From: Macrostomum lignano
Taxonomy: Eukaryota
Length of the DNA: 46,303 bases
Assembly: GCA_002269645.1 (NCBI GenBank)
Contig: NIVC01003320.1
Location: 1-46,303 of the forward strand
Reading direction: 5' to 3'
This document shows, in pieces, positions 2,313 to 40,888 of the stretch (position 1 is its first letter; each line of letters opens with the position of its first letter). The notes below the pieces were generated by a model that was not told where the DNA came from, ran no database searches, and saw only the letters and a list, made by a program, of their open reading frames with translations. The position numbers were made by a program, and so were the translations under genes.

Positions 2313-2567
2313 CTGCTTTTACCTAAAAGCATAAGGAAAATGAGAATTGCTTTTAACCCTGAAGCATAAGGAAAGTACATTGAAATTAAAATTTGATGCC
2401 TGCTTTTACCTAAAAGCATAAGGAAAATGAGAATTGCTTTTAACCCTGAAGCATAAGGAAAGTACATTGAAATTAAAATTTGACGCCTGCTTTTACCTGA
2501 AAGCATAAGGAAAATGAGAATTGCTTTTAACCCTGAAGCATAAGGAAAGTACATTGAAATTAAAATA
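2313..2567. repeat. 87-bp tandem repeat, about 3 copies, in the 3' non-coding region of Gypsy #1
   Basis: Unit starts CTGCTTTT at 2313, 2400 and 2487. Confidence 0.95.
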
Positions 2568-2826
2568 TAAAAAAACCGCTTTCAGCACAGAGCAGGTGCA
2601 GAGAAAGCTTACGGCAAAATTAAAAAATTGGAATGCGTTCGCAAAATCAACTACTAATAGTAACGTGCATCAAAAGTTAGCAACTTGGCGCGACATAAAA
2701 TGCATTGGTAATTACCTTTCAAACTTCAATCTCCGCACCGATATCAGGCAAATCCGGGTCGCCTTTGGGCAGCACTTCCGGATGGTGGGGGCTTGGCTCG
2801 AACAATTGGCTGCTGCGCATGTCAGG

Positions 2827-6780: not shown

Positions 6781-6829
6781 CCGTTTCCCAAGCTGCTGTT
6801 GTGCTGGGACGCAGTGCTGGCCGACCGTC

Positions 6830-8129
6830 AGTGCGGGCATTTGTCAGCGCAATGCTCGCAGTTGCACCTGTAGCACATTGCACTTTGCCGTCGCAACTGA
6901 TAGGGCAGCGGTCTTGAACTTGATTGTTGCTGCTGTTGCTGCTGCTGCAGCTGCTGCTGCAGCTGCTGCTGCAGCTGTTGCTGTCAATGTTGACCTCCTG
7001 CTGGCGGGTTCTCGGTGGCGGGTTGCTGCCGTCTTTTGGTTGCTGAAGTCGCTGGAACTGGTCGTGCGGCACAGTTCTTTTTGCTGGGCGTTGTAAATTG
7101 GGCACTTCCGTCGGCACTGCGGCGAGGTGTCGGATGTACTAGACATCTAGAGCGTTGGTCCTACGAGTCCCGCGACTGGTGTCAAGGTTCCCATGGCTCC
7201 GGGGTGTCGTTGTTGCGCAATCCCCGCGAGTAGAACTCTCGCATCGCATTACTCAAAGTTTCAAGTAGGCGTCGCTGCTCTTGCTGTGTCTCAGCTTGTT
7301 CCATGACTTCTCGCAACCAGTTTTCCTTGGGCCGAGATGACTTGTCGTGTTGCACCACAGTGGGCATCTGATCGTTGTCATCCTCAAGAACCCGGACGTG
7401 TCTCGCTGCTGGCGGCAGTGCTATACGCTGAGCCATGCTAGCTGCTGTCTCCAGGCGTAGCACGGCCCGTCTCGCTGCGGTCAGATTTGGGGATTGCACC
7501 AGGATTAGCTGTTCTCGGGCCAACTGAGCAATCCGCACTCCCACAGTGAACTGATCCACCAGTTCAACCTGCTTCTGAACTGGGGTAAAATGCGGGAACG
7601 CTCAATCGGCCAAAGCAATTAGTTGGTCGCCGTAGTTGTCCACACTCTCGTTCTTGCCTTGCTGGCAGCTTCGAAATTGCTCCCGGTACTCCAGCGTGTC
7701 GGCGACATGCGTAAAACGCTTAGACAATTGTTGTTTGAACTCACCAAACTCCATCCTGACAACTGCAGGGTAGGCTGTGGCGATGTCCAGATTCACGAGG
7801 ACCTCTGCCTTCTTTTGTCTGTCGTCATTGATCCTGTTGAGCTTGCATCGCTCTTTGAGAGCCTTGATCCAGACGTCAAATTTCTGGTTGGGCGTGTACC
7901 ACTGGATCTTGACTGGTTTTGGCGCTGGAGCTCGATCCTGCTGCTGGGGCTGCTGGCACACATAGTGATGGTGTTGCGGCTGGCCCAGGCTAGTCTGCTC
8001 CAGTCTCCGGTGCACCTCGTCGGTCACTGCACAAATCATCTCGTCATAGGTCGGTCTAGTAGTTGAGTTGTCGGGGCCTGCGGCGTCGGCTGTTGCGTCT
8101 GCGGCCGTTGGATCATTAGTTGAAGCCAT
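6830..8129 (-). pseudogene. gag: gag of Gypsy #1
   Basis: Probable ATG at 8129 (MASTNDP). Retrotransposon-gag-like segment (FDVWIKALKERCKLN...FRSCQQGKNESVDNY) is frameshifted into 7182-7559, then a polyQ run and a CYRCNCEHCADKC knuckle at 6837-6875. Confidence 0.8.
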
Positions 8130-8489
8130 AGTGTAGCGTTTGAACGACTCGTTGAAGGGGTTTTGGCATTTCGTAATCCCACTTAGCTGACACCAGTGAG
8201 GTGGGGGTGGAGAAGAATTGACAAAGTTGAAAGTTGGCCGGTTTTCGTGTAAACCCGGTAGCATTGCATTCGCACAAGTAAAGCCGGAAATTTTGCGCAG
8301 ACGAATCACAACGTAATCTTCTCCTTTTACTCCAACAGCCGGGGTCCCCAAGTCCGGGGGAGGGTAGTCATACTCGTAGCAGAGTGGTTGTGTAGCGGCC
8401 CGGTCGTTCAAAGCGATGAAAACACCGGAAATGTAGGCACCGTAGTTAATGTGTCGTTTTGCTGAGCTTATTACTTCCAGTAGGGTAGA

Positions 8490-8499
8490 GCTGCCACCA
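8490..8499 (-). promoter_or_regulatory. Primer-binding site TGGTGGCAGC (tRNA-Leu-like)
   Basis: Starts 1 nt after the LTR-terminal CA. Complementary to a 3' end ...GCTGCCACCA typical of eukaryotic tRNA-Leu; only 10 nt are matched. Confidence 0.7.
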
Positions 8500-8500
8500 C

Positions 8501-9231
8501 TGTAATTTACGTATTACGGAATGGATAAGTCTCGGAGCTTTTCTTTAGCTGAGGAAACTTGGTTATTTTATGCCCCACGGGCAAAAGATTCAAGATAGGC
8601 TACGGCTTAAAGTCACCTATTAATGTATTAATAAATTGAATCGATATTATTTCTTTATTTGTTGGGATTTATTGAGCAGGATGAATAGATTATTATTACT
8701 GACGAGGATGAGCTTCGGTGGCCGCGGTGCGACAATTAATTAAAATGAAATAAAACTAAAAGAGTAAGCAGAAGGAGTACCGAATTAAACTAACACGTCA
8801 AAATGGAGGGAAAAGTAGGTGGAGGAGGAGGAGGAGGAGGTGGAGGTGGAGGTTAAACCAAAACACAAACAGATGCACATTTTATAAGTAAACGTGACGT
8901 AAAGTTTGCCGCTGGACCAGATTAAGGAAAGCATACGAAACCCGTCTGGTCCAGCGATGGCAGAGTAATGAAAATACATGCAATTAAATGTGGTATGCAA
9001 AAAGGGGGAATGAAGGGATAGCAAGTTGGCACGGGGTGGAGATTAAAATATCCCATTGCAAGATGGGGTGCGTGACAAAATTTTCGGTAACTTGGCCCTA
9101 CATGGGAAAACAAAAAAATGGCTTGCACTTATCGTAAAAGGAAAAGCACCAAATTTTGAAAGTTAATAAATGTCTATTAAATTGAATGAGTAAATAAATA
9201 TTATTTAAACCAGGGGCAGCCACCTGCCACA
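8501..9231 (-). repeat. 5' LTR of Gypsy #1 (731 bp)
   Basis: TG...CA termini, adjacent PBS, direct repeat of 1-483. Contains a (GGA/GGT)n tract. Confidence 0.9.
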
Positions 9232-9685
9232 ATTATATTATATCTTTTCTAAGAAATCAAATCTATGTAAGATGCTTAAAACTAGTTTGTTTAGATGCAC
9301 CAAATATTTTGTTTTAATATGGTAAATAGTTTGTTTCAATACATGAAATAAATTTGTACAATAATTTTTGTTATAATTGTATTGGGGAAATGTGGGTATA
9401 AATAGTGTCAAATAAACCAACTGCCCACTGCATTACTATCAGTCTATTCTGTGAGCAATCATTTGCAAGCAGTTCAACCTATACAATCTTAGAGCTTTCA
9501 AGTTAAGAGTTATTCATTTGTCAAAGTTGACGAACAGTTTAAAAAAGTTTGCTTAGAGAGAGAATTGGGAAGAGATCCAGAGAGAAATACTAAGAGTTTT
9601 ACTGTGACCCCTTTATCTTAGTAATGCCTGAATTTGGAAAGTACAGATACTAGTACGATTGCTCAGGCCAAGATTATTAAAATGC

Positions 9686-11063: not shown

Positions 11064-15840
<4,777 letters not shown>

Positions 15841-18776: not shown

Positions 18777-22841
<4,065 letters not shown>

Positions 22842-23576
22842 CGGAGCTCAGGTAGCTAATTGCTGTATTCACATGTGACCTTTCTTACGGTAAACTTTCT
22901 GGGAAATGGGCTTTAAGGCTTCTAAAGTAACGCCAGCTTTCAACATTTGACTTAGGAAGCTGTATGCCGAGTATTTTGACGAAATTTTAGAGTAGTTATA
23001 ATATTTATTTTTAATTTTTTTTAAAAGTGAATAATTGCTGGACTATTGAATAGATATGATTTTAATGCGAATGTTTAGTTAGAATTTAGTCTACATGCTG
23101 TTGAAGTTTTTTTTTATAAATAAAAGAATTACCTTTGACTTTTAAATCCTGCTAAACAACATTTTTGTTAACTTGAAGGTCACTTTTGTTTTTTTGTATA
23201 TAACTTTAATTATTTGCTTGAACCCGATCAAAAATTTCGAATTGTACATTAGCTTTACGTCAATTAAAATTGCTAATAAAAAATTACGTGAATACGACAT
23301 TACAGGTACGTAGGCTGGATTCCAAGTGCAGTCATAAATTGGGGGCTAAAATGGAATCTCGGCTTGGCTCTGCTCGTGTAATTAACGCAATTCAGGCTCA
23401 ACCCCAAGGCACAGTGAAGTGTACATGCCTAACGATAATTAAAGTTAGGGCCGCTGTACACTCCTGTGTGAGTGTGTGCCTGTGTGTATGACTGCGTACG
23501 TATCCGCGAGCTTGTGTGCCTGCTCAGGGGAGTCGGCGTAATGGGCAGTAATGCCTCTCGCCGGTTGTGTGACAAT

Positions 23577-26500
23577 TGAAGTGACAGTTGATTGGTTTGT
23601 GAGCCATCGGACTGCAAGGCGGGGAGCTAACCGAGCTGCATCGGCCGAAGCCGATGACTGAGAGCACTGCCGGCCCCTCGCCGGTGAAGCTGCCTCGCTA
23701 TCCGTTCGACAAGAGGCCTGCCACCAGCTCGACTCGAAGGGGGGAGATGAAGTGACAGTTGATTGGTTCGTGAGTAGGTAACTGTGTGGGGTTCGTTTGC
23801 ATAAGTTCGCTCAGTCACTTTGTTTGCATTGTTACGCTCCTTCCCGAGTTCTTGATGATGTACCTAAATTGAACTCGCTGCTCCGGAAGTACGAGCTAGC
23901 TAGATAGTACCGTTTTACTACCTATCGATTTGCCTGAAAGGAACCTAAAACGTTAGCCTTAGTCTCGGTAGGGTTGCTGCCACCTTGGTTTGCGGACTCG
24001 ACGCGTCGGCAGAGTTGTCTATCCGTAACCTGAAATATAATAACGAAGTCGTTCGGAGCAAGGCAAATCTGAAAATGTCTCGACAGTTGATCGCTCCTAA
24101 AGCTGCTGCTCGAACCTGAAAACCTGAAATGAGAGAGGAGAGCTCGGAGGCAGAAAGGCAGCTCCGTTCGCCGGACGGACGCGATGGTAGTTCATCGCCA
24201 GAGCCTCCTCCTTGTGCCCACTTCAGACTATCCTATTTCAGATCTTGAAGGACCAGCGGACCCGAAGCATCAACGCCGAGTTCGACAGGCTGACATCGGA
24301 GCTGCGACACTCCCTGCCATCTCTGAGGACTCTGACGAAGAGGAAGACGACCTGGACACGAGACGCGCCTACCGCTGGCGACTCAGTTCAGCTGCTAATC
24401 CAGGCGTGCGCCCAACTGAAGTCCGCATCCACGAACCAGAAGTCATGGAGAGGAGAGTAGAGCTTGAGTCACTGCCGTATGATTCTTGCAACGCTCCATC
24501 CGCTCCTACAGTTGAAACGCTGAGGCGAACTGAAAGTAGAAATAGCGATAGGATTATCTTATAGACTGATACGATAAATCAATGTCATAGTCTTGTTTTG
24601 TCGGCCAATGTGCCATCCACCAGTCAAGTTGAATGGGCCGTCAATGACAGGCCAGTAAGGGCTCGAAAGGAACCTGACCGTTTGGTTCTCAAACCAAATT
24701 CAAAATCCCACTTGAGCCGCTTAATTAACTTCTTTTGCCGGCCTCGTGCCTGTTCCAGAGCTGAAAAGCAAAACTAAAACCAACATAACCGGCAAAGAGA
24801 ACGGCGATCGCGAGCCCTCCAGGACGTTTTCGCCGGCCCGTGGGCGCAAACGCATGCGACCCGCCCCGCCAGCTCGCAGGATCCGTGTCATCCCGGCTCC
24901 GAACCAGGACCCGGCTCGCATGCGACGCAGCCGCTGGGATGCCCATCCCCTGGGGGATGCAAGTATAGAGTATAAGGATGCTAATCAACTGTCATTTAGG
25001 GACTATCGTAGGAACTATTAGGAATAGGACTTAGGTCTAGGTTAGAAATTAGGGAATTGCACTGTTATCAGAGCGTGGTGGAGTGTAGCAGTTGTGGACA
25101 GCTGCACTCTTACAAAAAGCCACAAGCGCTCGAGGACGGCATTGCAAAGGGCGAGTGCAGGCCGCCCTAAAAGTCTGCTTCCACTTTAAAGGGGTTGTAT
25201 GCCTTTATGTGGGGTGGGGTTCAATTACATTTTTAAACAGAGACATTTCAGAAGTCGAACGAGACAGGGAGACCGTCAGAATCGGCCGGAATGGAATTGC
25301 GACGATGACTGGAAGACGTGGGAAGTGATAACGCAGACAGTTTCACAGGGACTTCTTCTGAGAAATTTACTATAAATAAGCGAGGGGTTAAATGTCTAAA
25401 TCTTTACTCTTTTCACTCTCTCTATCCTAACTATTGAATTGCTTAAACAACTAGTTTGCCAAATCGTGCCGATCGCATCTGCAGAAACCAGCTGTGAACG
25501 GAGGGTAAAACTGAGCACTGCCATGACTATAGATTTCTGAATATTAGCATATTGGTCTCAGACCAAGTAGACAGGCGTAAGATATATCCATTATTCATCT
25601 ATTATACGTATATAATAGATTAATAAGAGTATTCGAGTAGCTTAGTTATACCGAAGTGTCTCAGACTTATTCTTCCTGCTTGTAGCTCGCTTATTTGCTT
25701 ACTTACTTATTTATACAAACATTAAAAATGCAGTATTAAATATAGTTATATGGTTAAAAATAGCATCCAAGCATATTCTACCTCGTTTGAGTTATTATTA
25801 ATCATATGTAAGGTTCTAGTTAGCGGCCGGCTAGACCCTTATATAAAAGTGCGCCGACTCGCACCTTTGCAGCCACCTCAGCTAAGTGACCGACTAGCTG
25901 TCGCTAGAGAACGAGCGGCTGCCATCCGGCTCCGTTTGGACCCGCCCATGGCGATCACAGCAGAGGCTCGGCTACCGGCCGCAGAGGAAGCTCGAGGAGC
26001 CGCAGCCCCGCAGAAACCGTTGCCGGAGCAGCCGATCCATGGCTCGTCCGCTCTGCCACAATCGCCACCGGCGCAGCCGACCCGCGAACCAGCTGCGCAC
26101 AGCTCGCCCGTTCAGCAGCAACTGCAAGGGAGTGGCAACTTCTTCGACCTGATTGGCAGCGTGTCCAGCTCACTGAGGAACCTAGCGAAGAGCTGCTGCC
26201 GCCGATCCAGGAGTTGCTGGCTCCAGGCGCGCAGGCCCCACGAGAAGCGCACCCAGCGGACCTTTTAGACCCGAGGGTGGACACGCTGCGAACGCCGCCT
26301 CCTGCTCAGTCGCCGCCAGCTCTCCACCTAGGCGTTCTGACGCCGCCGCCGCAGCCTGACGCCGTCAACTTGTACGACTATCCGACGCCACCTACGCCTC
26401 CGTTGCTGCGCTTTCGCCGCCCTTCGCCAGTTCTGTTGCCTCCTAGGCTCTTCAGTCAAACCGAGCTGGCCGAAGCCATCAGCGCCGCCATCCGGGCCAG

Positions 26501-27027
26501 GCCTCAGCAAGCTGATGCGACGACCCAAGTCGATCATCTGGGCTTTACATCACATCAGTGACGAAAGCATCAGCGCGCTGACGGAGCTGCTCGTGAAGGC
26601 CGGCCTCAAGGTGGAAGCAACCCTACCAAAACTGAGGCTAACGTTTTAGATTCTTTTCAGGCAAATCGATAGGTACATGTAGTACAACGGTACTATCTAG
26701 CTACTTCCGGAGCAGCGAGTTCAAATTTTTGGTACATCGTACAAGAACCCGGGAAGGGGCGTAACAGCAGCTTGCGATCTGCGTGTACTCTACTCTGTTC
26801 AATGTGAATCATTGCGCTAGCCATTGCCTCGCCCCTTAAGTCTCTACCATTTTGTACCCTCTCCACTCACTTAGCCAGTGCATCAGTGAAATTCAATATT
26901 TACAATATTTAAGCTATTGCTCTCGGTCTTTAACTCGTCAAGTAACTTTGGCTATTCTACAAATACATCGCCAGCATTCACATTAGTTATTAAACAACAA
27001 TCAGCTCCTGACTTTCGCGTCACGTCA
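23577..27027 (+). mobile_element. Internally deleted Gypsy-type LTR element, interrupted by a TIR element
   Basis: Termini TGAAGTGAC/GTCACGTCA (8/9 inverted match), TSD ACAAT at 23572-76 and 27028-32. The first ~28 nt recur at 23748 directly after a PPT (GAAGGGGGGAGA). The PPT is preceded by an integrase-tail motif RSTRGLPPARLEGGR*. Confidence 0.75.
23830..26766. mobile_element. 2.9-kb element with ~158-bp terminal inverted repeats (TGTTACG...CGTAACA), Ginger-like and non-autonomous
   Basis: 23830-23986 is the reverse complement of 26608-26766 with scattered mismatches and small indels. Flanks GCAT/GCAG give a near 4-bp TSD. Interior has integrase-C-terminal-like remnants (VVHRQSLLL, RPVRARKEPDRL) but no DDE core. 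Confidence 0.7.
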
Positions 27028-27257
27028 ACAATGTCGCTTAAAGTGCGCCAGGGTGCACACAGCCCCAGCGCCTAATTCCAATCTTAAAAAAGCATTCAAT
27101 GCAATTTTTTCTAGACGGATGTTTCTCCACCTCAGGTAGAGCGCTTGGATCTGTTAAGGGACTGATGCGGACTGATAAACCAATATGACCAAAAAAGCGT
27201 AAAAAATCACTTGCTAACACCCACAAACTTGTCATTGCCACTGAGCAGGCAATCAAA

Positions 27258-27924
27258 CAAACAAAAACAACAACAGAGTACGCTGTCTGTTCGCAAAAGC
27301 AGCGTCAGATGGCGCGCTTCGAAGCTTGGGCGCGAACAAAGGCCGCACCGCCGGCAGAGTCCGGGGCGCCGGCGTCAGCCAGCAGACAGTCGACGTAGCG
27401 CCGAGTCCTCGCCTGTCCCCGCCGGTAGGGTGCCTGCAACGTAAGTAGCAGCACCTCCTGCACCGGCTCCGGACAGTAGGCCTCGGCGCGGATGACGTGG
27501 CCTGCCAGCTGGAGTCGCCGACGGCGCAGCAGATCGCTAGGACGGGCCAGGCCGGCGCGATGATAGAGCGCCGTGTTGGTGACTCGCTCGTTGCCGATCT
27601 TGAAGACGGCGCGCAGCAGGCCAGCTTGCGCCGCGTCGATTTGAGCCTCGAGCGAGTCTGTCAGCGTCCAGGTCTCGGCGTTGTATAACAGGACGGTCTC
27701 GATCACCGCCTGGAACAGCGCCGCCCTCTGGCGGTCCGGTAGGCCCTCGGACTGCAGGACTGACCTTAAAGAACGAAAGGCAGCCCAGGCAAGTCCTCGA
27801 CGACGCCGCAGATCCTCGCGGACGTCGGGAACCAGACCGCCAAGGTAGACGAACTGCTGACATCTTAGAAGCTCACTCGCCTGTCCGTCAGCGCCTCGGC
27901 AGAAGATTGCAGCCTCGGTGTCAA
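27258..27924 (-). mobile_element. 5'-truncated RTE-like non-LTR retrotransposon
   Basis: Uninterrupted frame from ~27921 to 27305: FVYLGG...AWAAF...LLYNAETWTLT...RRRRLQLAGHVIR, the post-RT region of RTE/RTE-X ORFs. (TTG/TTTG)n tail. Candidate TSD AATCAAA at 27251-57 and 27925-31. Confidence 0.88.
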
Positions 27925-28464
27925 AATCAAAGCCAAAAAAACCGAACCGCCATTTAATAACGTATTTTTCTACTGTTTTGACTAAAATTCAACTTTAAAG
28001 CGAAGATGCAAAGTTACTCGGCGTTTCGTCGACTGAGGTTCACTGTGTTCGTATCGCCCTGTTTCTTTCTATCCCTACCGTCTTAATTAATCATTTAGCC
28101 ATCATTATATAGTAATAGAATATCGAACTAAACTGCTACTTCCAGGAAAGCAGGAATTTGACATATGACAGTTGACTGTGTTGAAAGAAATGGTGCATAA
28201 TGCCATAAGCTTGTCACAGATTTTCAATTCAAAGCAACCAGCATTTGATCACTTTTTCTCAAGTAAGGAGTCGACAATAATTAGGGTTTATTTTTATTAT
28301 CCCTGCTCACTCTTGGCCATAGAACCGAACTCTAGGAGTTAAAGATGCGATAACGTCAATTGAGTTGGTCTAATTTGACTTCAAACAGTTAGCGTAACAG
28401 AGTGGGACAAAGAATCAGTTTAGCACTAACGTCTGTTCATTTTTAGCATTAAATTTCAACAAGC

Positions 28465-30260
28465 ATGAGCAGAATGTCTCAACGATGGGTTTCACACTTT
28501 TTGCTAACAGTGCTGCTTTTCCTCTGCCGATACGCCAGCGCCGTTAAACTCCACAAACCCCGGTCAGAAGTTCTCTCACTGCTGGGCGAACAAGAAGGTA
28601 AGACAATTCTTATTTACCATAGCTCGTATTTGCGGTGCTGATTTTGACACGAAAGAATTGATAAACTTGACCGATGATGAAACTCTTGCCCAAGCCCTAA
28701 CCCGCTATTGGAGATTGGGTTAGTAAATTCAACACCTGTTCAAGCATTTTCCTCACTCTAAAATCTTGCATTCCCTGGTCACATAACAAAGTTATTACGA
28801 TACGGGCTTAAATTTATTTGGAAATATATTTATTCTACATGATAAATAAGTTACTGAATTAATAGCAGCACCATATGAAGTCTTAAAACCAACAATATAT
28901 CTAACTACGTCCAAAATAAAACATTTTGAAAACGTCTTTAGAGCAGTCTCTCGAGGATGTGACCTGCTCAATTATTGTGAATTTATGAATAAAGTCTAAA
29001 TTTCTAGGAGTACCAAAGATCAATAATTATACATCTATTTTACGCATATTTTACGGTTTTTACCCTAAATTGTGAATATCTCATCTTCTGACTGGATTTT
29101 ACGCATGCACACAACAGCTTTTATGAAATCTGATTCAAAGTTGATTTTACAAATTGAATTCACTGAATAACTTGAACTTCGAAACATCTATTAGAAACTT
29201 TTACGAGTAAAAAATGTGCTGAATGAATGATTTTATGCAAATATATTGCTTCACATTGTATTTAGCCTTGGGCAAAAGTGCGATGGGAAGAACCCCGATT
29301 TTGTTTAATTTTGAACAATTTACTAGATTTTCTTCCAGAACTAACATTCAAAGCTTCATATGATTGATCATCTATCTCGCTGTAATGCACTAGAAGGGGC
29401 AATCTGAGGCTCTGTAATATATTTAAATAATTTTAAACTACATGCTACATCTTGCTACCAGGAAAACTATGTAGTAGCTAGGAATTTAACATTGTCAGTG
29501 GCGAAAACGACTAATTAGCCCTCCGACGATATGTGACTTTTAAAACTTTTGAAAGCCCCGAAAGACATGGAAAATCTCGCTACTACATTTCCTCCCATCC
29601 ACTCGAATCCGCATCAGGCCGACTGTACTTTGGCAACTGCGAGCAAAGCAGCGAACAATCTCCGTGCGTCTTCGCCATAGACGAGAGCTACAATCAGGAG
29701 CCAACCCAGTGCGCCGTGACATCTCTGGAAGGCAAGCCCTGGTGGATGGGCGTCCTCGAGACGCCGGCGTATATAACTAAGATAACGCTGCTCAATATCG
29801 ATCAGCTGTATCGTTCTCACCCGGACGCCCTTCGCGCAGTAACCATTATGGCAGGTGATGACGTCTGCTTCCGCTACGAAAGCGACGAGTCTTTTGTTAA
29901 GCGTTCGTTTCCTTGCGACACCGTTGCGGACCAGATCGTCATCAGGAGCAGAATGGATTCAGCGGCTTTGACTCTGTGCGATGTCACAGTTTATGGCGCG
30001 CCAATTAGATTTCGGGGAGTTGTTGACGATGCTGGGTGAGCATTTAACTGACAAAATCAATACTGACAAAAACTTTTTGCCCTGAGAAAAACGAAAGAAG
30101 GAAATAAAGACGGCAATAGACAGCCAGAAACTATTTATTTAAATGCACAAAAAACTGACATCAGGTGAGAAACCTAAGAACAATCAGGATGGATAGTGAG
30201 ATCGAAACTAATAAACAGACAGACAGACAGACAGATAGACAGACACTAAGGCAGACACTA

Positions 30261-30331
<71 letters not shown>

Positions 30332-30356
30332 TAGACAGACACTAAGACAGACACTA

Positions 30357-30425
<69 letters not shown>

Positions 30426-30454
30426 CTAAGACAGACAGACAGACAGACACACAC

Positions 30455-30509
<55 letters not shown>

Positions 30510-30572
30510 CACAGACACACACACAGACAGACAGACACACACACAGAGAGACAGACAGATAGACAGACACTA

Positions 30573-30609
<37 letters not shown>

Positions 30610-30752
30610 CACACACACAGACAGACAGACAGATAGACAGACACTAAGACAGACACTAAGACAGACAGACACACACACACAGACAGACAGACAGATAGAC
30701 AGACACTAAGACAGACACTAAGACAGACAGACAGACAGACAGACAGACACTA

Positions 30753-30785
<33 letters not shown>

Positions 30786-30830
30786 CACACACACACACAC
30801 AGACAGACAGACAGACAGACACACACACAC

Positions 30831-30897
<67 letters not shown>

Positions 30898-33800
30898 CTA
30901 AGACAGACAGCTCATTCCATTCCATTTGGCTTTCCCGGCAGCCCTTTGCGAGTTCAGTCGTGCCAGCAGAGCAGTGTAAGCGGCAACGGCTACTGCGAGA
31001 ACGCATTCGATGGCGATGCAAACAGCAACCACAATGCGCGTCCTTGTGCAGTCACCATAGACGAAGCAACGCCCTGGATGTCAGCCAGACTGGAAATTCC
31101 CTCTCTGGTGACAGAAATCAAAATTTTCAACCGAGCCGACTGTTGCGGCGATGGACTCAACCAATTTTTGCTGACACTTGATAATCGAGTCTGTGCGGAT
31201 TACGAAGGTGCAACGTTCGAGTCGAAGTCTTTCTCGTGCTTGTACTTCGGCAGTCGGCTGCGCATTAAAAGCAAGAAAAATAGAGCCATTTCAGTCTGCG
31301 AGATGCAGGTCCTTGGCTACCCTATGGAACTTCCGCGAGATGCGAAATTCAGTAAGTTAGGATTCAAAGAAGATAATGGGAAGTTAATCCCTAATAGTTC
31401 TCACAAAAATTCACAGGAAAAACGTGTCTGCTCTATCCCACTGCTAACAAAGTGCCACTCCTCCCAGATCCCCAGTTGCTGGGCCAGCCAGCCTCCCAGA
31501 TCCTCAGTTGCTGGGCCAGCCTCCCAGATCCCCAGTTGCTGGGCCAGCCAGCCTCCCAGATCCTCAGTTGCTGGGCCAGCCTCCCAGATCCCCAGTTGCT
31601 GGGCCAGCCAGCCTCCCAGATCCTCAGTTGCTGGGCTAGCCAGCCTCCCAGATCCTCAGTTGCTGGGCCAGCCAGCCTCCCAGATCCCCAGTTGCTGGGC
31701 CAGCCAGCCTCCCAGATCCTCAGTTGCTGGGCCAGCCAGCCTCCCAGATCCTCAGTTGCTGGGCCAGCCAGCCTCCCAGATCCTCAGTTGCTGGGCCAGC
31801 CAGCCTCCCAGATCCTCAGTTGCTGGGCCAGCCAGCCTCCCAGATCCCTAATTGCCAGCTCCCTATGCGCACCTGTAAGAACAAGCAAAGACGAGAAATA
31901 GGCTTAAGGCGTAGACCGATTCATGGCTGCCCAGGGCGCCATGGCACTCACATATATATTATGATTGTACAGCGAGCAAGTGTACAAATACGGGCAAGTA
32001 AACTTGCGCCCAGGCAGTCAACTAATCAAACCATCTTAAAATGCTCTCCTTCTTTCAAAAAAGTGTTTCACTCACTTTCTGCATTTTTCGTTATGTTTAA
32101 AAAGGTTACGAGTATGAGTTCGATGAAGTCTGGCCTAATATTTTGACGAATAAATATTTGAGTGAAATAAAAGTGGAAATTAAAATGAACTTACGCTCGG
32201 AAGCAATGTCAATGTTTCAAAAAAAGATCTAAGAAAATCCGCATTTAATGAGTATACCGGTACACTTCGCCAAAAAATCCTGGTGGGGTACGGGCCCTCT
32301 CACTTCGACTCAATGCAGGCTGTTCTGGATGCGCTTGAACATCAGCAGGGGCGCCGACTAGGGCGCCGACTTGGGCGCTGACTGGGGCGCCGGCTGGGAC
32401 GCCGGCTGGGGCGCCGGCTGGGGCGCCGTCAAATCTCAGGTCGTCCTCGTCAGGATTGTGCAGTTGCGCCGCTGGTTGCAATTGAGGTGCTGCAGCTGGA
32501 CTGGCCGTGTTGCATGGCTTCAGGCGATTGAAATGCACCACCCTTCGCCGTCGTGCATTGGCCTCGTGCTGAACGCGGTAGGTGACGTCTGAGATCTGCT
32601 TTTTAACGCGCCATGGCCCAGTCCACCATCGATGAAATTTTCGGCTCTCGCCTCGCTTCGGATTGTGCAGCCAGACCAGATCGTCCTTGCTGAATGCCTC
32701 GCTGACTGCCTTCTGGTGCAATTGCGCTGCCTTTAAGTTTTGTTGCGCCCTCTCATGCGATGTCTGCAGCCGGCTTCGCAGCTCGGCCACCCATTCACAA
32801 GGACGTTGTCCATCTGGCGCCAGACCTCCGTATGCCAAGTCTAGTGGTAGTCGCAGTTCCCGGCCGAAATGCATTGCCGAAGGTGTCTGACGAGTCGACT
32901 TGTGGACTGAAGTGCGGCAGCCCATCAGTGCAATCTGCAGATGAAGATCCCAGTCTCGCTGATTCTCGTTCACCCATGCTCGCAGCAGCTGCATCAGCGT
33001 CCGGTTCATCCGTTCGCAACCACCGTCTCCCTCAGGGTGATAGCCTGTCGTCCGATTCTTGTCGATTTTCAGCAACGCATCGTTTCTTGAAACAGCTGCG
33101 ACTTCCATTTCCGACCCTCGTCGGTGTGCACCGACTACGGGACTCCAAAGCGAGCCACCCACTCACTGACAAACGTCCGGGCTGTGGTCTCAGCATCGTG
33201 AGACGGCAGTGCAAAGGCCTCAGTCCACTTTCTGAAGGTGTCGATGACTACCAGGATGACTGAATTTTCACGATCGGTCCTCGGTGTTGTGTTCTAATTA
33301 ACACAGAGAGTTTCTTTGATTGAAGCTTTCTCGGCGAGACACAAATCTCGCTCACAATATGTTTATAGAGGTGAAACTCCTACTTGCACGTTTCATTGCC
33401 AAATCGATACGCAATCACCTACACATTCTAGTCTGAGTACAGTATACGCCCACGCATTCAATAAGGTCAATAGTTAATTGTCAGTGGTCAGTTCATTGCG
33501 CAAGCATTGTCAATCACAACACTCGGCAAGCCCACTATGAAGTCCATTTCCAGTCGCTGGCCAACGCTGCCGACCGCCATGCTCTGTATAGAAGCGCCCG
33601 CCTGTGCTGGCCAGAATCCTTCATTGTCGCGCATTCGAGGCATGCAGCACACCAGTCAGTCACATCTGCTGTCAATCCAGGCCAGTAGAGTCGCGTCCTG
33701 ATCTTTTCAATGGTCTTCTGCGGTCGGCAGTGGCTGCCGCTTGTTCCAGCATGAGCTTCGACAAAAACATCGCGCTGTAGACTCTCTGGCACCAGCAGCT

Positions 33801-36800
33801 GCTGACAAAAGGCGCTGCCATCTTCGGATTCCCATCGGCGGCACAGCAGTCCGTTCACCAGTGTCAGCCGCTTAAACTCGGACAGCAGTTGCCGCTGCCT
33901 TCCGTCTCTGCCTTGTCCGGTGGTTGACTATCTCGCAAGCAGTTCGCCAGCTTCTGCATGCACCAATCCTCTGCCTGTGCTCGTCGAATCGCGCTGTCGT
34001 CATTGAACTCGACAGCGAGCGCAGAGCCACTGCACAGACAAGGTCCTTTTCGACACGGTCACCGACTGAGTGCGTCTACATTTCTATGTTTCTCGCCCTT
34101 GCGGTAGTCGAATTCGCTTAGTGTATCCAGCCACCGTGCCAGCTGACCATCGGGATCTCGGAAGCGCAGAAGATGAATAAGTGAGGCGTGATCAGTACGT
34201 ACTATAAATCTCTTTCCCAACAAGTAGCTACGATAGTGACCGACGAAGTGCACAATTGCCAGCAGCCCACGCTTCGTTGTGCAGTAATTTCTCTCTGCTT
34301 TGGGCAGAATGCGACTGCCGTACTCCACCACCTGCGTCCTGCCACCACGGCGCTCTTGAAGAACTCCTGAGATGGCCACGCCAGAAGCATCGGTATTCAG
34401 CACGAACTCAGCGTCTTCTGCGAATGTCGACATGATGAGGACTGGGCCGGAAGTAAGGCACTGCTTTAGGCGATTAAATGCTGCTGAGCATTCGAGAGTT
34501 CAGCTGAAGGTCACGTCCTTTTGCGTGAGCTTGTACAGCGGTTCAGCAATCTCACTGTACTTTTTAACGAAATGACGATAGTTGACACACAACCCCAGAA
34601 ATTGTCGCACTTCTGAACGATCTTCGGGTGTTGGCCACCCTACACTGCTTTCATCTTGTCCGGGTCAGTGGTCACGCCATCTTTTGCGACTCGGAAATCT
34701 AGAAATGAGATTTCCTGATAGCACAAGTGGCACTTGGTCGGCTTCAACTTCAGATTAGCGGTTCTGAATTTCTGCAACACAAGCTCAAGACGCCGCAGAT
34801 GCTCCTCGAATCCTTTCGAAAAGATAGATGACAACGTCGTAAAGAAATGACAGGCATACTTCCCATCAGAGGCCCTTCAGAACGAGTTCCATCAGCCTTG
34901 AAAACGTGAAAACGTGGCAGGACCATTGCACACACCTTGCGGTAGTCTCTTGCTTTGGAATAATCCCTGTGGCGCAAGGAATGCTGTTTTTGAGCGACTC
35001 TCCGAGTCCAGCATCACCTGGGTGTACCCGCTAGTGAAGTCGAGCGTTGAGGACATTGTGGATCCTGCGAGAGCATCGATCAGATCGCTGGTGTGAGGCA
35101 GTGGATGACTGTCTTTGACGGTCACGGAGTTGAGCAGTCTGAAGTCGTTCACGAAGCGCAAACTGCCGTCCTTCTTCACCAGAATTACCGGGCTCGACCA
35201 CGGAGAATTCGAAGGCTCTACGATGTCGTCTCTCACCATCTGCTTGACCATCTCTAAAACAGCTAGCTAGTTTGGCGGCGACAATCGGCGAGGAGGCACT
35301 CTGATGGGTTTCCCCGACCCGGTGTCAATTTTGTGGTCAAGTAGTCAAGTGCAACCCAGGTCGTTTGGACTTTTCGAGAACACAACCCGGTACTGATACA
35401 GAAGATCTTTGACACACTGAACTTGATTGGCTGTCAATTTTTTTATCACATTTGGTGCATACTCAGCGATCTGACCTTTCACTGACTCAACTTGCATTGA
35501 CAACTCTGCATCGGCACCATCAGACATCGGCTCAAAAGTCCCCAGTCTTGTTCCGGGGTAAAATGTATGCGACTTGGTGTCCGTATTGACATCGTGAACG
35601 GCGATGAGTCCTCCTCGCAACACCGAGAGGCTGCGCGCTCCACACATGACCATGGAGATGTCCTTCGAATTGTCAGGCTCAAAGATGCCGCACTCACCAT
35701 CAACAGCTGCAGCTTACCCACTTGCCAATCTCGCTGGGAAAACGATTTCGTGACCAGCGGGCACGGTTGTCCTGTCTGCTACCTCAACGGCGAATACACA
35801 GCTACTGGCTGCCGATGACTCCATTTTTACTTGCTGACCGCACACAGTGAGCGTTTGGCGATTGCAGTCGATGACGCAGCCGCAGTTTGCCAGGAAATCT
35901 GCACCCAGCAAAAAATCCTTGGCCAGATTTTCGACAACCAAAACTCTTTGTCGAACCGTTGCCACACTGAAACTTAGCTGCACGTCCTGCCAACCACAGG
36001 CAGCCAAATAGTTACCGTCTGCCAGCTTCAACTGCACCGGAGTCGTCAAAGGCAGGAGCCTCTCATTCAGCTTGCAAAACAGGGAACTTGACATCAGAGA
36101 CTGGGAACACCCAGTGTCAACTAGACAGCTGGCAGGGATACACATTGGCAGGATGCGACAGTTTACCAGCATGTTTACTCCAGTGGCTGAGCTGGACACC
36201 TCCACGACTGGTTGCGCCGGGATTCTCACTTGCGGAACGGCACCCCGGCGGTCGCCGCTCCATCAAAGTTTCCCGACTTCTGAGTGCGAAATCTTTGAAC
36301 ATGGCCCGACTTACCGCACTTCCAGCATGGCACGACTCTGCGTCTGTCGCCGCTCTGACGATGATCCTGGTCCTTTGACTCCCAGCGACTGAGCTTGTTG
36401 TACAGCTCCTTCAGATACCGTTGAATTCCGACTGCAAAGGCTTCGGGAACCTTAGCAGCCAGAGCCGTAGCGGTGCCTCCTTGTGACTGTATCGATTCCA
36501 TGAATCGCGCTGTTTCCCTCAATCCGGATAGAAACCGACCTTTGAGCAGCTCGTCCTTCGCTGTCACTGACGTTTCCTGCTCAGCACTTGCTTTCGTTTC
36601 CATCACTGGAAAGTGCGCTTTGCCGCAACGATCAGGGCATCGGAGTAGTCTGCAACCGACTGACCGTCCTTTTGAGTCAGATTGAAGAACTGCGCCTGCA
36701 GCTCAGCAGAGGATGTTGATGGCCGAAATCGATTTTTCAGAGCCTTCTCAAAGTGGTCGTAGGACCGGGCAGCCTCCAAATTGCTGGCCGCTTGATATGC

Positions 36801-38267
36801 TTTGTCATCGAGGAATGACAGCAGAGCATTCTTGCGCTGATCCACTCGAAGAAATGATGCGAAATTGTTGAATCGCGCCAGCCAAAGTTCAAAGTCTTGT
36901 CCATGCTGGTATTGAGGCGGCCGCAAAAACATGTTGACAAAACTAGCTTGGGCTGAGTCACCGCCATTGAAGGGCTTTCTGCACTGCCTTCCTTTTCAGT
37001 CATCAATGTAAGAACAAGCCAAGACGAAAATAGGCTTAAGGCGAAGACCAGGGGTCGGCAACCTCCGGCCCGCGGGCCAGATCCGACCCGCAAAGACTTT
37101 CTATGCGGCCCGCGAACTTCCTTAATCTTAATTATTACAATCCGGCCCGCACTTTTATTGTAACTTCATTGTTTCTCCTACAAAAGTTTTGTGCACTAAT
37201 AATGGGAAATTTCTTTCCTCAATTGCCAACTTTAATAACAAATTAGTTAACAATGAGACCCGAACTGATCGTGTAAGTGGCTGTTTACAAACTCTAGACA
37301 GACAGCACATCAGTTCAAACTTTCGAATATGGTATGGGGGGGTAAAGGCCCAGGGGGGCAGATTTTGGAGGGTAAAGACCCAGGGGCGGATTCTGGAAGG
37401 TAAAGACCGACGGGGCCGATTCTGGAGGGTAAAGACCGGGGGTGGATTCTGGAGGGTAAAGACCGGGGGTGGATTCTGGAGGGTAAAGACCCATGGGGCA
37501 AATTTTGGAGGGTAAAGACCCATGGGGCAAATTTTGGAGGGTAAAGACCCAGGGGGCGGATTCTGGAAGGTAAAGACCGACGGGCGGATTCTGATGGGTA
37601 AAGACCCAGGGGGCAAATTTTGGAGGGTAAAGACCCATGGGGCAAATTTTGGAGGTAAAGACCCAGAGGGCGGATTCTGGAGGGTAAAGACCCAGAGGGC
37701 AGATTTTTGAGGGTAAAGAAAGACCCAGGAGGGGGGGGGCGAAGTAATCGGGGGACGACCTGTGGCCCGTGGTCTTGAACTGAAAACCTCATCTGGCCCT
37801 CAAGTGGAAAAAGGTTGCCGACCCCTGGCGTAGACCGACACTTGGCTGCCCAGGACGCCAAGGCACTCACTTATATATTATAATTGTAAAGCGAGCAAAT
37901 ATACATACGGGCTAGTAAACTTTCGCACCTGCAATCAACTAATCAAACCATCTTACACAACCAATACGCTCATATATCTCGTTATCACAATGCAGAGGCC
38001 CTCGGCTGCTACAAAGACAACCACAAAGACCGCGACCTCGGTCAGCTGACGTCCAGCATCCTCATGAGCCACGAGAAGTGCTATTCGATTTGCAAGCGAC
38101 TTGGCCTGAAATATTTCGGCGTCCAAGGCGGAGCGCACTGCTGGGGCGGATCGACCTACGGCAAGCACGGCAAGGTTGACGAAAAAAAGTGTTCCATACC
38201 CTGCGAGGACAACGAGAAGCAGAGATGCGGTGGTTCGATATTCAACAATATTTTCGAGGTCCTGTGA
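28465..38267 (+). CDS. Secreted lectin-like protein B (SP-FTL-FTL-WSC), 410 aa
   Basis: join(28465..28597,29618..30035,30942..31351,37996..38267) = 1233 nt. Exons 2-4 have the same sizes (418/410/272) and phases as A. Intron 3 is expanded to 6.6 kb by TEs. Confidence 0.9.
30214..30910. repeat. (GACA)n microsatellite with CACTAAGA interruptions, intron 2 of lectin B
   Basis: Seen directly in the sequence. Confidence 0.99.
31460..31857. repeat. 28/32-bp minisatellite, about 13 copies, intron 3 of lectin B
   Basis: Same unit as in A, with an extra CCAG in many units. Confidence 0.96.
32245..36229 (-). pseudogene. pol: pol of Gypsy #2
   Basis: CLVDTGCS (protease); [22 protein letters not shown] (RT, YxDD decayed to FLYD); NTDAS...RTDHASL...NVDALSR (RNase H); [25 protein letters not shown] (integrase). 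Many stops and frameshifts. Confidence 0.92.
33285..33521. mobile_element. 237-bp solo LTR inserted in the integrase of Gypsy #2
   Basis: Termini TGTTGTG/CACAACA, perfect 5-bp TSD CTCGG (33280-84, 33522-26). Removing it restores [31 protein letters not shown]. Confidence 0.9.
36215..36274 (-). promoter_or_regulatory. -1 ribosomal frameshift signal (G GGA AAC + 6-nt spacer + H-type pseudoknot) at the gag-pol junction
   Basis: Heptamer is in phase with gag and pol lies in the -1 frame. Stem1 GGAGCGGC/GCCGTTCC; stem2 CGCCGGG/CCCGGCG. Confidence 0.75.
36226..36932 (-). pseudogene. gag: gag of Gypsy #2
   Basis: ORFs 36603-36932 and 36226-36606, joined by one frameshift. FELWLARF...[12 protein letters not shown] and a decayed [13 protein letters not shown](R) zinc knuckle. 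Confidence 0.85.
37049..37827. mobile_element. Non-autonomous hAT (Charlie-like) DNA transposon/MITE inserted in the 5' LTR of Gypsy #2
   Basis: 16-bp TIRs CAGGGGTCGGCAACCT/AGGTTGCCGACCCCTG, 8-bp TSD GCGAAGAC/GCGTAGAC, subterminal GGCCCGCGGGCC motifs. Confidence 0.92.
37340..37720. repeat. ~27-30-bp minisatellite inside the hAT MITE
   Basis: Repeating GATT(C/T)TGGAGGGTAAAGACC core. Confidence 0.9.
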
Positions 38268-39526
38268 TGAAGCTCGTGGATCTCATTGCTGGTAGATTGC
38301 AGTTTTTTAGGTCTTACAGCTGGGAACCATCTTCTACTGAACTTTCTGACTAAGATTTTTTCAAGTTGAGAGCAGCTCTTTTTAGTCATTTTTCTTTTGA
38401 AGTAGCTAGCTAGCTAAAAATACGAGCGCTCGTAAGTAGTGTATATTTACGAGTACGTGAACTGTCTTACTTTCTCAGCTACAAATACAAGTGTAGACCA
38501 TTAGAACTGTACGGTTTTTCATTAAATTGTGAATGGTAAAGAAAACCACACACATCATTTTGGCTGTCATATAAAGTTGCAGCAAGAGTGTAAGAACTTT
38601 TTCAGTGCATTGTTTTGTTATAAATACTTTTCTACAATATAGAGTGTTTATTTTTTATGTACACAGAGGGTTGCTACATATAAATATTCTAATTTGTCTT
38701 CACCATTGATATAAAATCTTCGATTTCAACAAGTCTATTTGTGTCGTGCTGAAATTGAAAGGCATTATGAAAATATTAGAATTATAATTTTATGATACTG
38801 GCGAATAAAGAATTAAATTTTATTCAATACCGGTTAATTTTGCTAATAAAAGTAACGTTAGCTAAGAATCAGTACAGGGAATTCATTAGAAATATTGGAC
38901 AAACGACTGGATAAATATTGAAATATTGGTTACAATATTGGTAAATGTTGAATACTTGAATATACATTCAGTGATCAGATGTAGATATAATGGCCGGTTC
39001 ACAAAAACTACAAACAATTGAACGTCTAGGTGAAAATGTAGGATTACATTGATTGCTGCACTCAAGGAATATATGGACTTTAGCACTCGACGAATACTTC
39101 GACGTCGACAGATTAAATTGTCAGGCTCTCATATTCGGCTATTTTTTAAGAATTCAAAAAGACTACTCCGGAGGAAGAAGAATTGAAGAAACGAGCTCGG
39201 AGAACCTTGCCCGACAAAAGCAGCTTTTCAACTCCAGCAACCAGCATTCGATCACGTTTTTTTTCAAGTTACGAGTCGACAATAATCAAGGAGTTCTATA
39301 ATTATCCTGCTAATTATAAAACTCCTTGACTATAATAAGGGTTTATTTTTATTATCCCTGCTCACTCTTGGCCATAGAACCAAACTCTAGGAGTTAAATA
39401 TGCAATAACGTCAATTGAGTTCGTCTAATTTGACTTCAAACAGTTAGCGTACGCTCGTAGCAGAGTGGGACAAAGAATCAGTTTAGAATTAACTTCTGTT
39501 CATTTTAGCATTAAATTTCAACAAAC

Positions 39527-40888
39527 ATGAGCAGAATGTCTCAACCATGGGTTTCACACTTGTTGCTAACAGTGCTGCTTCTCCTATGCCGATACGCCAG
39601 CGCCGTTAAACTCCACAAACCTCGGTCAGAAGTTCTCTCACTACTGGGCGAACAAGAAGGTAAGACAATTCTTATTTACCGTATTTGTGGTGCTGTTTTG
39701 ACACGAAAGAATTGATAAACTTGGCTGATATTCAGATGAAACTCTTGCCCAAGCCCTAACCCTTTATTGGAGATTGGGTTAGTAAATTCAACACCTGTTC
39801 AAGCATTCTCCTCACTCTAAAATCTCGCATTCCCTTGTCACTAAATTACTTAAAATACTGGCTTAAATTTACATTGAGACATGTTTATGCTACAATATTC
39901 TTAAACTATAGCATAAGCAGCAATAAAAACGCTCTTAAAAGTTAAAACCATAAATTTATCATACTATGTCCAAGACTAAACATTGTCAAAACGTCATTAG
40001 TTCAGTTTCCAGAGGATATGACCACTTCAGAGATAGGAAATTTATTTAAATGCTGAATTTCTTGTATTATATTTACATAATTTTTAAGTACATGCTTACT
40101 TCTTGCTAACAGTAAAACTATATAGTTAGCTACGTACTACAAGCTCGAAATTTAGCATTGTCAGTGGCGAAAACGACTAATAAGCCTTCCGACGATATTT
40201 GACATTTAAAGCTTTTAAAAGCCCCGAAAAAAACATGAAAAATCTCGCCACTACATTTCCTTCCATCCACTCGAATCCGCATCAGGCCGACTGTACTTTG
40301 GCAACTGCGAGCAGAGCAGTGGACGGTCTTCGTGCGTCTTCGCCATAGACGAGAGCTACAATCAGGAGCCAACCCAGTGCGCCGTGACATCTCTGGAAGG
40401 CAAGCCCTGGTGGATGGGCGTCCTCGAGACGCCGGCGTATATAACTAAGATAACGCTGCTCAATATCGATCAGCTGTATCGTTCTCACCCGGACGCCCTT
40501 CGCGCAGTAACCATTATGGCAGGTGATGACGTCTGCTTCCGCTACGAAAGCGACGAGTCTTTTGTTAAGCGTTCGTTTCCTTGCGACACCGTTGCGGACC
40601 AGATCGTCATCAGGAGCAGAATGGATTCAGCGGCTTTGACTCTGTGCGATGTCACAGTTTATGGCGCGCCAATTAGATTTCGGGGAGTTGTTGACGATGC
40701 TGGGTGAGCATTTAACTGACAAAATCAATACTTCTGTGTAAAGAAACTTTTTGCCCTGAGAAAAACGAAAGAAGGAAATAAAGACGGTAATAAATAGCCA
40801 GAAAAGATTTATTTAAATGAACAAAAAACTGACATCAGGTGAGACAACTAAGAACAATCAGGATGGATAGTGAGATCGAAACTAATAA

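What the first reader, a model, noticed from the sequence alone, without database searches (positions are those of the whole stretch)
23830..26766. TIR-bounded element whose cargo looks like a circularly permuted LTR retrotransposon
Seen: ~158-bp TIRs starting TGTTA and a near 4-bp TSD; TGT ends with a 4-bp TSD are the Ginger DNA-transposon signature. Inside, in order: integrase-tail-like sequence (24184-24950), a PPT-like GGGGGA, a putative LTR TG(24958)...CA(25549) with TATAAATA at 25371, a TGG-initiated PBS-like TGGTCTCAGA, then a frameshifted Pro-rich ORF (~25947-26649) that ends inside the right TIR. The left TIR boundary read on the minus strand gives LPTRRVRKPRWQQPY*, another integrase-tail-like motif. 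Inference: a DNA transposon that captured a pol-LTR-gag junction (1-LTR circle or tandem array), or an autointegration/inversion product. Either would be an unusual class I/class II hybrid.
Basis: partly seen in the sequence, partly recalled or inferred. Interest (0 to 1): 0.7.

Follow-up and report, generated by a model that had tools for sequence, protein, structure and literature searches.

The report
Lone decayed transposon with inverted ends
A real 2.9-kb element with 158-bp inverted ends sits here, most likely an old, dead DNA-transposon relic of unplaced family, and nothing supports the idea that it carries a rearranged LTR retrotransposon.

Summary
The arms are 23830-23987 and 26607-26766: 139 matches, 14 mismatches and 4 small indels (91%). 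They end TGTTA...TAACA and are the only long inverted repeat in the 46-kb window apart from a 45-nt CAG/CTG repeat pair.

The "TSD" is GCAT/GCAG, 3 of 4 bases, which chance gives about 5% of the time. It matches neither published Ginger target.

- No Pfam domain in any of six frames, although the same library finds integrase, reverse transcriptase and RNase H in the window's two gypsy-like elements.
- No protein homologue in 5.8 billion clusters.
- No hit for the best-scoring part of the Pro-rich ORF in 1.84 billion representatives.
- No second copy of the putative LTR or of the TIR anywhere in the window.
- The "PPT" is six purines, and TG...CA ends carry no information.

The best reading is a solitary, decayed, non-autonomous TIR element with integrase-type (TGTNR) ends. 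It holds remnants of an orphan plus-strand ORF that stops inside the right TIR. The AT-rich "LTR" is probably spacer or intron. Copy number and family could not be tested because no host genome was available. Interest is low.

The parts
23830..23987 (+). Left terminal inverted repeat; outer end TGTTACGC
   Evidence: 91% identical to the reverse complement of 26607-26766; nhmmer E 4e-57
26607..26766 (-). Right terminal inverted repeat; outer end GCGTAACA. It contains the last 13 codons and the stop (26647-26649) of the plus-strand ORF.
23826..23829 (.). Left flank GCAT, a candidate half of a 4-bp target-site duplication (3 of 4 with the right flank)
   Evidence: only length 4 gives a near match; empirical P = 0.054
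26767..26770 (.). Right flank GCAG, the candidate second half of the 4-bp duplication
24184..24564 (+). 126-aa ORF, acidic and basic, with no homologue. It may be exon 1 of a decayed gene, with a candidate donor after 24535.
   Evidence: no domain, no homologue; GC1>GC2 periodicity, weak positive codon score
24759..24962 (+). Basic Arg/Pro-rich open stretch in another frame. It joins in frame to the ORF on each side through candidate GT-AG junctions.
   Evidence: the joined translation is open; frame 2 scores best here, weakly; inference only
24963..25819 (+). AT-rich spacer (39% GC). It is possibly an intron or promoter region. A second TATA-like box, TATATAAAAG, lies just beyond it at 25840.
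   Evidence: composition, motifs; no other copy in the window; 25552-25566 is self-complementary
25820..26649 (+). Decayed Pro-rich ORF. The reading frame changes twice (frame 1, then 0, then 1) and ends with TAG inside the right TIR. It has no CCHC knuckle, no domain and no homologue.
   Evidence: frame map; whole ORF: no domain, no homologue; 26151-26558 only: zero hits among 1.84e9 representatives

Best explanation
This is a single, old, inactive copy of a cut-and-paste (class II) transposable element. It is 2,937 bp long and bounded by TIRs of about 158 bp whose ends (TGTTA...TAACA) are of the integrase/IS3-like 'TGTNR' type.

Inferred mechanism: a DDE transposase made by an autonomous relative binds the TIRs, cuts at the TG/CA ends and inserts with a short staggered cut. 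That would have produced a 4-bp duplication, now GCAT/GCAG after decay. This copy has no transposase.

The interior holds remnants of an orphan plus-strand coding sequence. It is acidic and basic at the 5' end and Pro-rich at the 3' end, has two frame changes, and stops 117 bp inside the right TIR. An AT-rich stretch interrupts it and is more simply read as spacer or intron than as an LTR.

Shown: the TIRs, the termini, the lack of any retroelement or transposase domain, and the frame disruptions. Inferred: mobility, a TSD length of 4, the family, and the splicing.
For: - The TIRs are far beyond chance, and apart from a 45-nt CAG/CTG repeat pair they are the only inverted repeat of 40 nt or more in the 46-kb window.
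- Arm homology stops sharply at both outer ends, exactly at TGT/ACA, and at the same inner point in both arms. That is as expected of a designed TIR and not of two truncated LTRs.
- TGTTA fits TGTNR, and 158 bp lies within the published Ginger TIR ranges of 40-270 and 50-180 bp.
- The flanks match 3 of 4 at length 4 only. With 9% arm divergence, one decayed TSD base is expected about as often as not.
- The arms have diverged 9% with 4 indels and the ORF has frame changes, which marks an old, dead copy.
- The element lies in a 5.35-kb stretch (22865-28217) that is specific to one of three paralogous ~10-kb units. That stretch also holds a LINE fragment, so it is an insertion-rich spot.
Against: - Only one copy could be seen. 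There is no other TIR copy in the window, and scans of metagenome, viral and prokaryote-genome collections gave nothing beyond one chance 21-mer match. Multi-copy status, the hallmark of a transposon, is therefore untested.
- The TSD is imperfect and alone is not significant (P about 0.05).
- The target fits neither Ginger1 nor Ginger2 preferences.
- There is no transposase, and no autonomous partner is known.
- No empty paralogous site could be found, because the flanks are also unit-specific.
- The host lineage is poorly represented in the protein databases: the MRTF-like exon gets a single weak hit. The 'no homologue' results are therefore weaker than they look.
Confidence: 0.5

Rival explanations
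1. This is a local, non-mobile inverted duplication. A 158-bp piece holding the last 13 codons and the 3' flank of a small gene was copied in reverse about 2.6 kb upstream, for example by template switching during replication or repair. The TGT/ACA ends and the 3-of-4 flank match are coincidences.
For: The structure is single-copy in everything searched. There is no perfect TSD and no transposase. The arms include the end of an ORF, and the left arm in the same frame reads KVAATLPRLRLTF* against KVEATLPKLRLTF*.
Against: Both outer breakpoints fall exactly on TGT...ACA, and the adjacent 4 bases nearly repeat. The surrounding 5 kb is otherwise made of insertions. ORFs that run into long TIRs are common in real transposons (general knowledge, not tested here).
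Confidence: 0.25
2. This is a non-autonomous or heavily deleted retroelement of a kind that naturally has inverted ends. One candidate is a Penelope-like element, where a 5'-truncated inverted copy sits head-to-head upstream so that the element's own 3' end, including the ORF end, forms the inverted repeat. The other is a DIRS1-like element with ITRs.
For: The geometry fits the Penelope pattern. The right arm carries the ORF's stop and 3' end, and the left arm is an inverted copy of just that 3' end. The absence of a clean TSD is compatible with DIRS. That these element types have such structures is from my own knowledge of the literature, not from a paper read here.
Against: No RT, GIY-YIG or tyrosine-recombinase domain appears in six frames. 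No hammerhead or other Rfam family is found, even at E up to 10. No internal complementary region matches the ends or flanks.
Confidence: 0.1
3. A Ginger-type DNA transposon captured a pol-LTR-gag junction of an LTR retrotransposon (from a 1-LTR circle or tandem array), or it is an autointegration or inversion product: a class I/class II hybrid.
For: The TGTNR ends resemble those of LTR elements and Ginger. The listed motifs are present at the stated positions. The order 'basic ORF, AT-rich block with TATA, Pro-rich ORF' is loosely like pol tail, LTR, gag.
Against: No integrase, RT, RNase H or gag domain or homologue is found (for 26151-26558), and the positive controls work. There is no tblastx or blastn similarity to either gypsy-like element or its LTRs in the window. 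The 'PPT' is 6 nt. The 'PBS' is a near-palindrome, and its implied tRNA 3' end would lack the conserved C61 (my inference). The TG...CA boundaries are arbitrary, with 5,865 alternatives. The Pro-rich ORF has no CCHC knuckle.
Confidence: 0.04
4. This is an endogenous fragment of a small linear DNA virus or virus-like element with inverted terminal repeats, such as a parvovirus or densovirus.
For: The size class (about 3 kb) and ITRs of about 150 bp are superficially similar.
Against: The arms do not fold into terminal hairpins (z = -0.9 and +0.2). There is no NS1 or capsid domain. The ORFs point outward into the repeats, not inward.
Confidence: 0.01

Closest known systems
Ginger1 / Ginger2 (TDD) DNA transposons (Bao, Kapitonov & Jurka 2010, PMC2836005)
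   Same: TGTNR...YNACA termini (here TGTTA...TAACA). The 158-bp TIR length lies within 40-270 bp (Ginger1) and 50-180 bp (Ginger2). A possible 4-bp duplication. An overall size of 2.9 kb, close to the lower end of Ginger1 (2.6-7 kb). Non-autonomous copies that share only the ends are described for Ginger-1_BF.
   Different: No integrase-like transposase (no rve, zinc finger or GPY/F). The flanks GCAT/GCAG are neither CCGG/CCGT (Ginger1) nor within an AT-rich RTATAY target (Ginger2). No autonomous partner and no second copy were seen.
GingerRoot (Cerbin et al. 2019, PMC6839031)
   Same: TIRs of 100-150 bp. Some copies end TG...CA. It often carries unrelated gene fragments.
   Different: GingerRoot makes 6-bp (occasionally 7-8-bp) duplications and mostly ends TA...TA. 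No 6-8-bp flank match exists here, and there is no DDE region.
Ty3/gypsy LTR retrotransposons, including the two in this window (about 1-9232 and about 31870-37955)
   Same: TGT...ACA end motif. Gypsy-like element 1's LTR also starts TGTGG.
   Different: The repeats here are inverted, not direct. There are no gag or pol domains and no second copy of the putative LTR. There is no sequence similarity to either resident element.
Penelope-like elements with inverted pseudo-LTRs / DIRS1-like elements with ITRs
   Same: Inverted terminal repeats, with an ORF that runs into the right repeat.
   Different: No RT, GIY-YIG or tyrosine recombinase, no hammerhead ribozyme, and no internal complementary region.

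Membership tests
Ginger (Ginger1/Ginger2) DNA transposons | Termini 5'-TGTNR...YNACA-3' | tested here: met
   TGTTA...TAACA at 23830 and 26766; criterion from PMC2836005
Ginger (Ginger1/Ginger2) DNA transposons | TIRs of about 40-270 bp (Ginger1) or 50-180 bp (Ginger2) | tested here: met
   158-bp arms, 91% identical
Ginger (Ginger1/Ginger2) DNA transposons | 4-bp target-site duplication | tested here: inconclusive
   GCAT versus GCAG, 3 of 4, empirical P = 0.054; only one copy was available
Ginger (Ginger1/Ginger2) DNA transposons | Target preference CCGG/CCGT (Ginger1) or AT-rich RTATAY (Ginger2) | tested here: not met
   The flanks read TTTGCAT|...|GCAGCTT. A single insertion cannot exclude a relaxed preference.
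Ginger (Ginger1/Ginger2) DNA transposons | Gypsy-integrase-like DDE transposase, in the element or in an autonomous partner with the same ends | tested here: not met
   No rve or other domain in six frames and no homologue. The window's rve ORFs belong to RT-bearing gypsy-like elements. A partner elsewhere in the genome could not be searched.
Transposable element in general | Several dispersed copies sharing the ends | not testable with these tools
   No host genome is available. The window holds only the two arms. Collection scans gave nothing beyond one chance 21-mer match.
LTR retrotransposon (as cargo) | gag and/or pol (PR, RT, RNase H, IN) coding remnants | tested here: not met
   Six-frame Pfam is empty and the positive control is positive. 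tblastx against the resident gypsy-like elements gives only noise.
LTR retrotransposon (as cargo) | The LTR is a repeated unit (a second copy in the element, or multi-copy in the genome) | tested here: not met
   24958-25549 has no other match in the window. The genome-wide count is not testable.
LTR retrotransposon (as cargo) | Polypurine tract abutting the LTR 5' end, and an 8-18-nt tRNA-complementary PBS abutting the 3' end | tested here: inconclusive
   Only 6 purines (GGGGGA), while longer purine runs lie elsewhere. The PBS candidate is a near-palindrome. The window has no tRNA gene to compare it with.
DIRS1-like retrotransposons | Tyrosine recombinase plus RT/RNase H, and an internal complementary region matching the termini | tested here: not met
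Penelope-like elements | RT with GIY-YIG endonuclease; hammerhead ribozyme motifs in the terminal repeats | tested here: not met

The most novel reading that the evidence does not exclude
The element is one copy of an undescribed family of integrase-end (TGTNR) TIR transposons in a poorly sampled eukaryotic lineage. Its cargo would be an orphan, intron-containing, Pro-rich gene whose coding sequence ends inside the TIR. That would make it a new Ginger-like lineage or a gene-carrying derivative. Less likely, part of the interior really is retroelement-derived but is too diverged to recognise.
Probability: 0.1. Interest if true: 0.4.

Novelty: new member of a known kind. Interest (0 to 1): 0.15.

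Why it matters
If the hybrid reading were true, it would be a rare physical link between class I and class II elements, relevant to the Ginger/gypsy integrase relationship. The evidence does not support it. What remains is an unclassified, dead TIR element. It is useful for repeat annotation of this genome. It may also extend the host range of Ginger-like transposons if an autonomous partner is found. Otherwise it is ordinary.

Tried and rejected
1. Exact-product look-ups for the element's ORFs and for two other window ORFs found nothing on record.
2. A 605-aa concatenated conceptual translation searched against 5.8 billion protein clusters gave no hit at E <= 0.01.
The 136-aa frame-0 ORF was then searched and gave 0 hits.
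4. TIR words were scanned in metagenome, viral and prokaryote-genome collections. The only match was a chance 21-mer in a phage-like contig, L001, with no further similarity.
5. An empty-site test used the three paralogous ~10-kb units. It failed because the element's flanks (22865-23829 and 26767-28217) have no counterpart either.
6. DIRS-like reading: no internal complementary region.
7. Penelope-like reading: no hammerhead, RT or GIY-YIG.
8. Parvovirus-like ITRs: the arms do not fold as hairpins.
9. Identifying the host through the MRTF-like exon gave one weak hit, on an anonymous metagenome scaffold. The host remains unknown.
10. Other TSD lengths from 2 to 10 gave no match. This argues against hAT, P, Mutator, Merlin, Transib, PIF, piggyBac and Tc1-type insertions, as far as one copy can.

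Full report
**Observation**

The window is eukaryotic and rich in repeats. It holds two gypsy-like LTR elements, a LINE fragment, micro- and minisatellites, an MRTF-like gene and three tandem ~10-kb units with F5/8-type-C-like exons.

Within it, 23830-23987 and 26607-26766 form an inverted repeat. The arms align with 139 matches, 14 mismatches and 18 gap columns in 4 small indels, which is 91%.

A 23-mer from the repeat occurs only in the two arms, with 0 expected in shuffles. A profile of the arms finds nothing else in the window. Apart from a CAG-repeat artefact, this is the only inverted repeat of 40 nt or more in the 46 kb. The structure is therefore real.

The flanks are GCAT and GCAG. 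They match 3 of 4 at length 4 and match at no other length from 2 to 10. The empirical chance of a 3-of-4 match is 0.054. So the "near TSD" is as described, but it is weak evidence on its own.

**The interior**

- GGGGGA is six purines, and four purine runs of 9-12 nt lie elsewhere in the element.
- The element contains 5,865 TG...CA pairs spaced 300-1000 bp apart, and 31 TGG triplets.
- The "PBS" TGGTCTCAGACCA is a near-palindrome.
- 'LPTRRVRKPRWQQPY*' is a roughly 19-codon stretch that follows a stop codon.

Homology tests are uniformly negative:
- Pfam on the individual ORFs finds nothing.
- Pfam on all six frames of 23700-26900, with stops masked, gives only one sub-threshold chance hit.
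- A 605-aa concatenated conceptual translation finds nothing among 5.8 billion clusters.
- An exhaustive phmmer of the best-scoring 136-aa piece finds nothing among 1.84 billion representatives.

As a positive control, the same Pfam library finds rve, RVT_1, RT_RNaseH and Integrase_p58_C in the window's two gypsy-like elements. Neither blastn nor tblastx links any part of the element, including the putative LTR 24958-25549, to those elements or their LTRs. No Rfam family, hammerhead included, is present. The window has no tRNA gene.

One caveat applies. The host lineage is poorly represented in the databases: an MRTF-like exon gets a single weak hit, on an anonymous metagenome scaffold. The absence of homologues therefore does not prove the ORFs are meaningless.

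**What the interior looks like instead**

A simple codon-usage log-odds map, trained on the window's own ORFs, gives weak but consistent plus-strand signal:
- 24150-24420, frames 1 and 2
- 24660-24960, frame 2
- 25830-26060, frame 1
- 26070-26430, frame 0
- 26460-26600, frame 1

Most of these segments show the GC1 > GC2 < GC3 pattern of the known ORFs.

Candidate GT-AG junctions at 24535|24759 and 24962|25820 join the pieces in frame. This gene model is inference only. If it is right, an intron-bearing gene argues against a retro-derived cargo.

The last exon changes frame twice and stops at 26647-26649, 117 bp inside the right TIR. The left arm in the same frame reads KVAATLPRLRLTF* against KVEATLPKLRLTF* in the right arm. 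The copy is decayed.

**Alternatives examined**

- *Two truncated LTRs in inverted orientation.* This is unlikely, because homology ends at the same inner point in both arms.
- *DIRS-like element.* There is no internal complementary region and no tyrosine recombinase or RT.
- *Penelope-like element.* The geometry fits, but there is no RT, GIY-YIG or hammerhead.
- *Parvovirus-like ITRs.* The arms do not fold as hairpins.
- *Local inverted duplication.* This cannot be excluded, because copy number is untestable here.

Searches of metagenome, viral and prokaryote-genome collections gave only a chance 21-mer. The paralogous units offer no empty site, since the flanks are also unit-specific.

**Comparison with known families**

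The published Ginger features are TGTNR ends, TIRs of 40-270 bp (Ginger1) or 50-180 bp (Ginger2), 4-bp TSDs with targets CCGG/CCGT (Ginger1) or RTATAY (Ginger2), and an integrase-like transposase (PMC2836005).

Here the ends and the TIR length fit. The TSD is inconclusive, the target does not fit, and there is no transposase. GingerRoot makes 6-8-bp TSDs and mostly ends TA...TA (PMC6839031), which is not matched either.

The element works like, and may be, a non-autonomous Ginger-type transposon. Membership is unproven.

**Verdict**

This is a real, solitary, decayed TIR-bounded element. It is most likely a dead non-autonomous DNA transposon with integrase-type ends (confidence about 0.5; Ginger membership about 0.2). 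A one-off inverted duplication is the main rival (about 0.25). The class I/class II hybrid reading is not supported (about 0.04). Interest is low.

Noticed in passing
window 1-9232 (minus strand): A gypsy-like LTR retrotransposon. Its LTR copies at 1-484 and 8748-9232 are 96.5% identical, and the left LTR runs off the window start. The LTR starts TGTGG. rve and RVT_1 domains are present, and the ORFs are broken into several pieces.
   Followed up: partly
window ~31870-37955 (minus strand): A second gypsy-like element, with Integrase_p58_C, RT_RNaseH and RVT_1 domains and a CCHC gag. It is inserted into the second of three paralogous ~10-kb units. Its upstream LTR region is expanded by a 28-29-bp minisatellite (37338-37720).
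   Followed up: partly
window 19770-29560, 29561-40228, 40229-end: Three tandem ~10-kb units. Units 1 and 2 are 77-84% identical; units 2 and 3 are about 91% identical. Each carries two F5/8-type-C-like (galactose-binding-like) exons, a long (GTCT)n array and a 28-32-bp minisatellite that stays open as a [25 protein letters not shown] repeat.
   Followed up: partly
window 27243-27900 (minus strand): A 5'-truncated non-LTR (LINE) fragment. It has a 133-aa RT-C-terminal-like ORF with very high GC3 (0.78) and a (TTG)/(TTTG)-like 3' tail. It lies about 475 bp to the right of the TIR element.
   Followed up: no
window 23577-23603 and 23748-23774: A 27-bp direct repeat, TGAAGTGACAGTTGATTGGTT(T/C)GTGAG, with copies 171 bp apart just left of the element. 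Its core GACAGTTGAT recurs inside the element at 24082 and, inverted, at 24983-24994. This may be chance (E about 0.6).
   Followed up: no
window 11064-15840: A poly-Q-rich MRTF/myocardin-like gene with RPEL and SAP motifs. Its introns hold 23-bp, 8/12-bp and 30-bp minisatellite arrays. The closest database relative is only 46% identical over 24% of the exon, which suggests a poorly sampled host lineage.
   Followed up: partly
L001 (SDBT01259509.1) 360-380: A phage-like metagenome contig shares an exact 21-mer with the TIR. There is no further similarity, so it is a chance match.
   Followed up: yes
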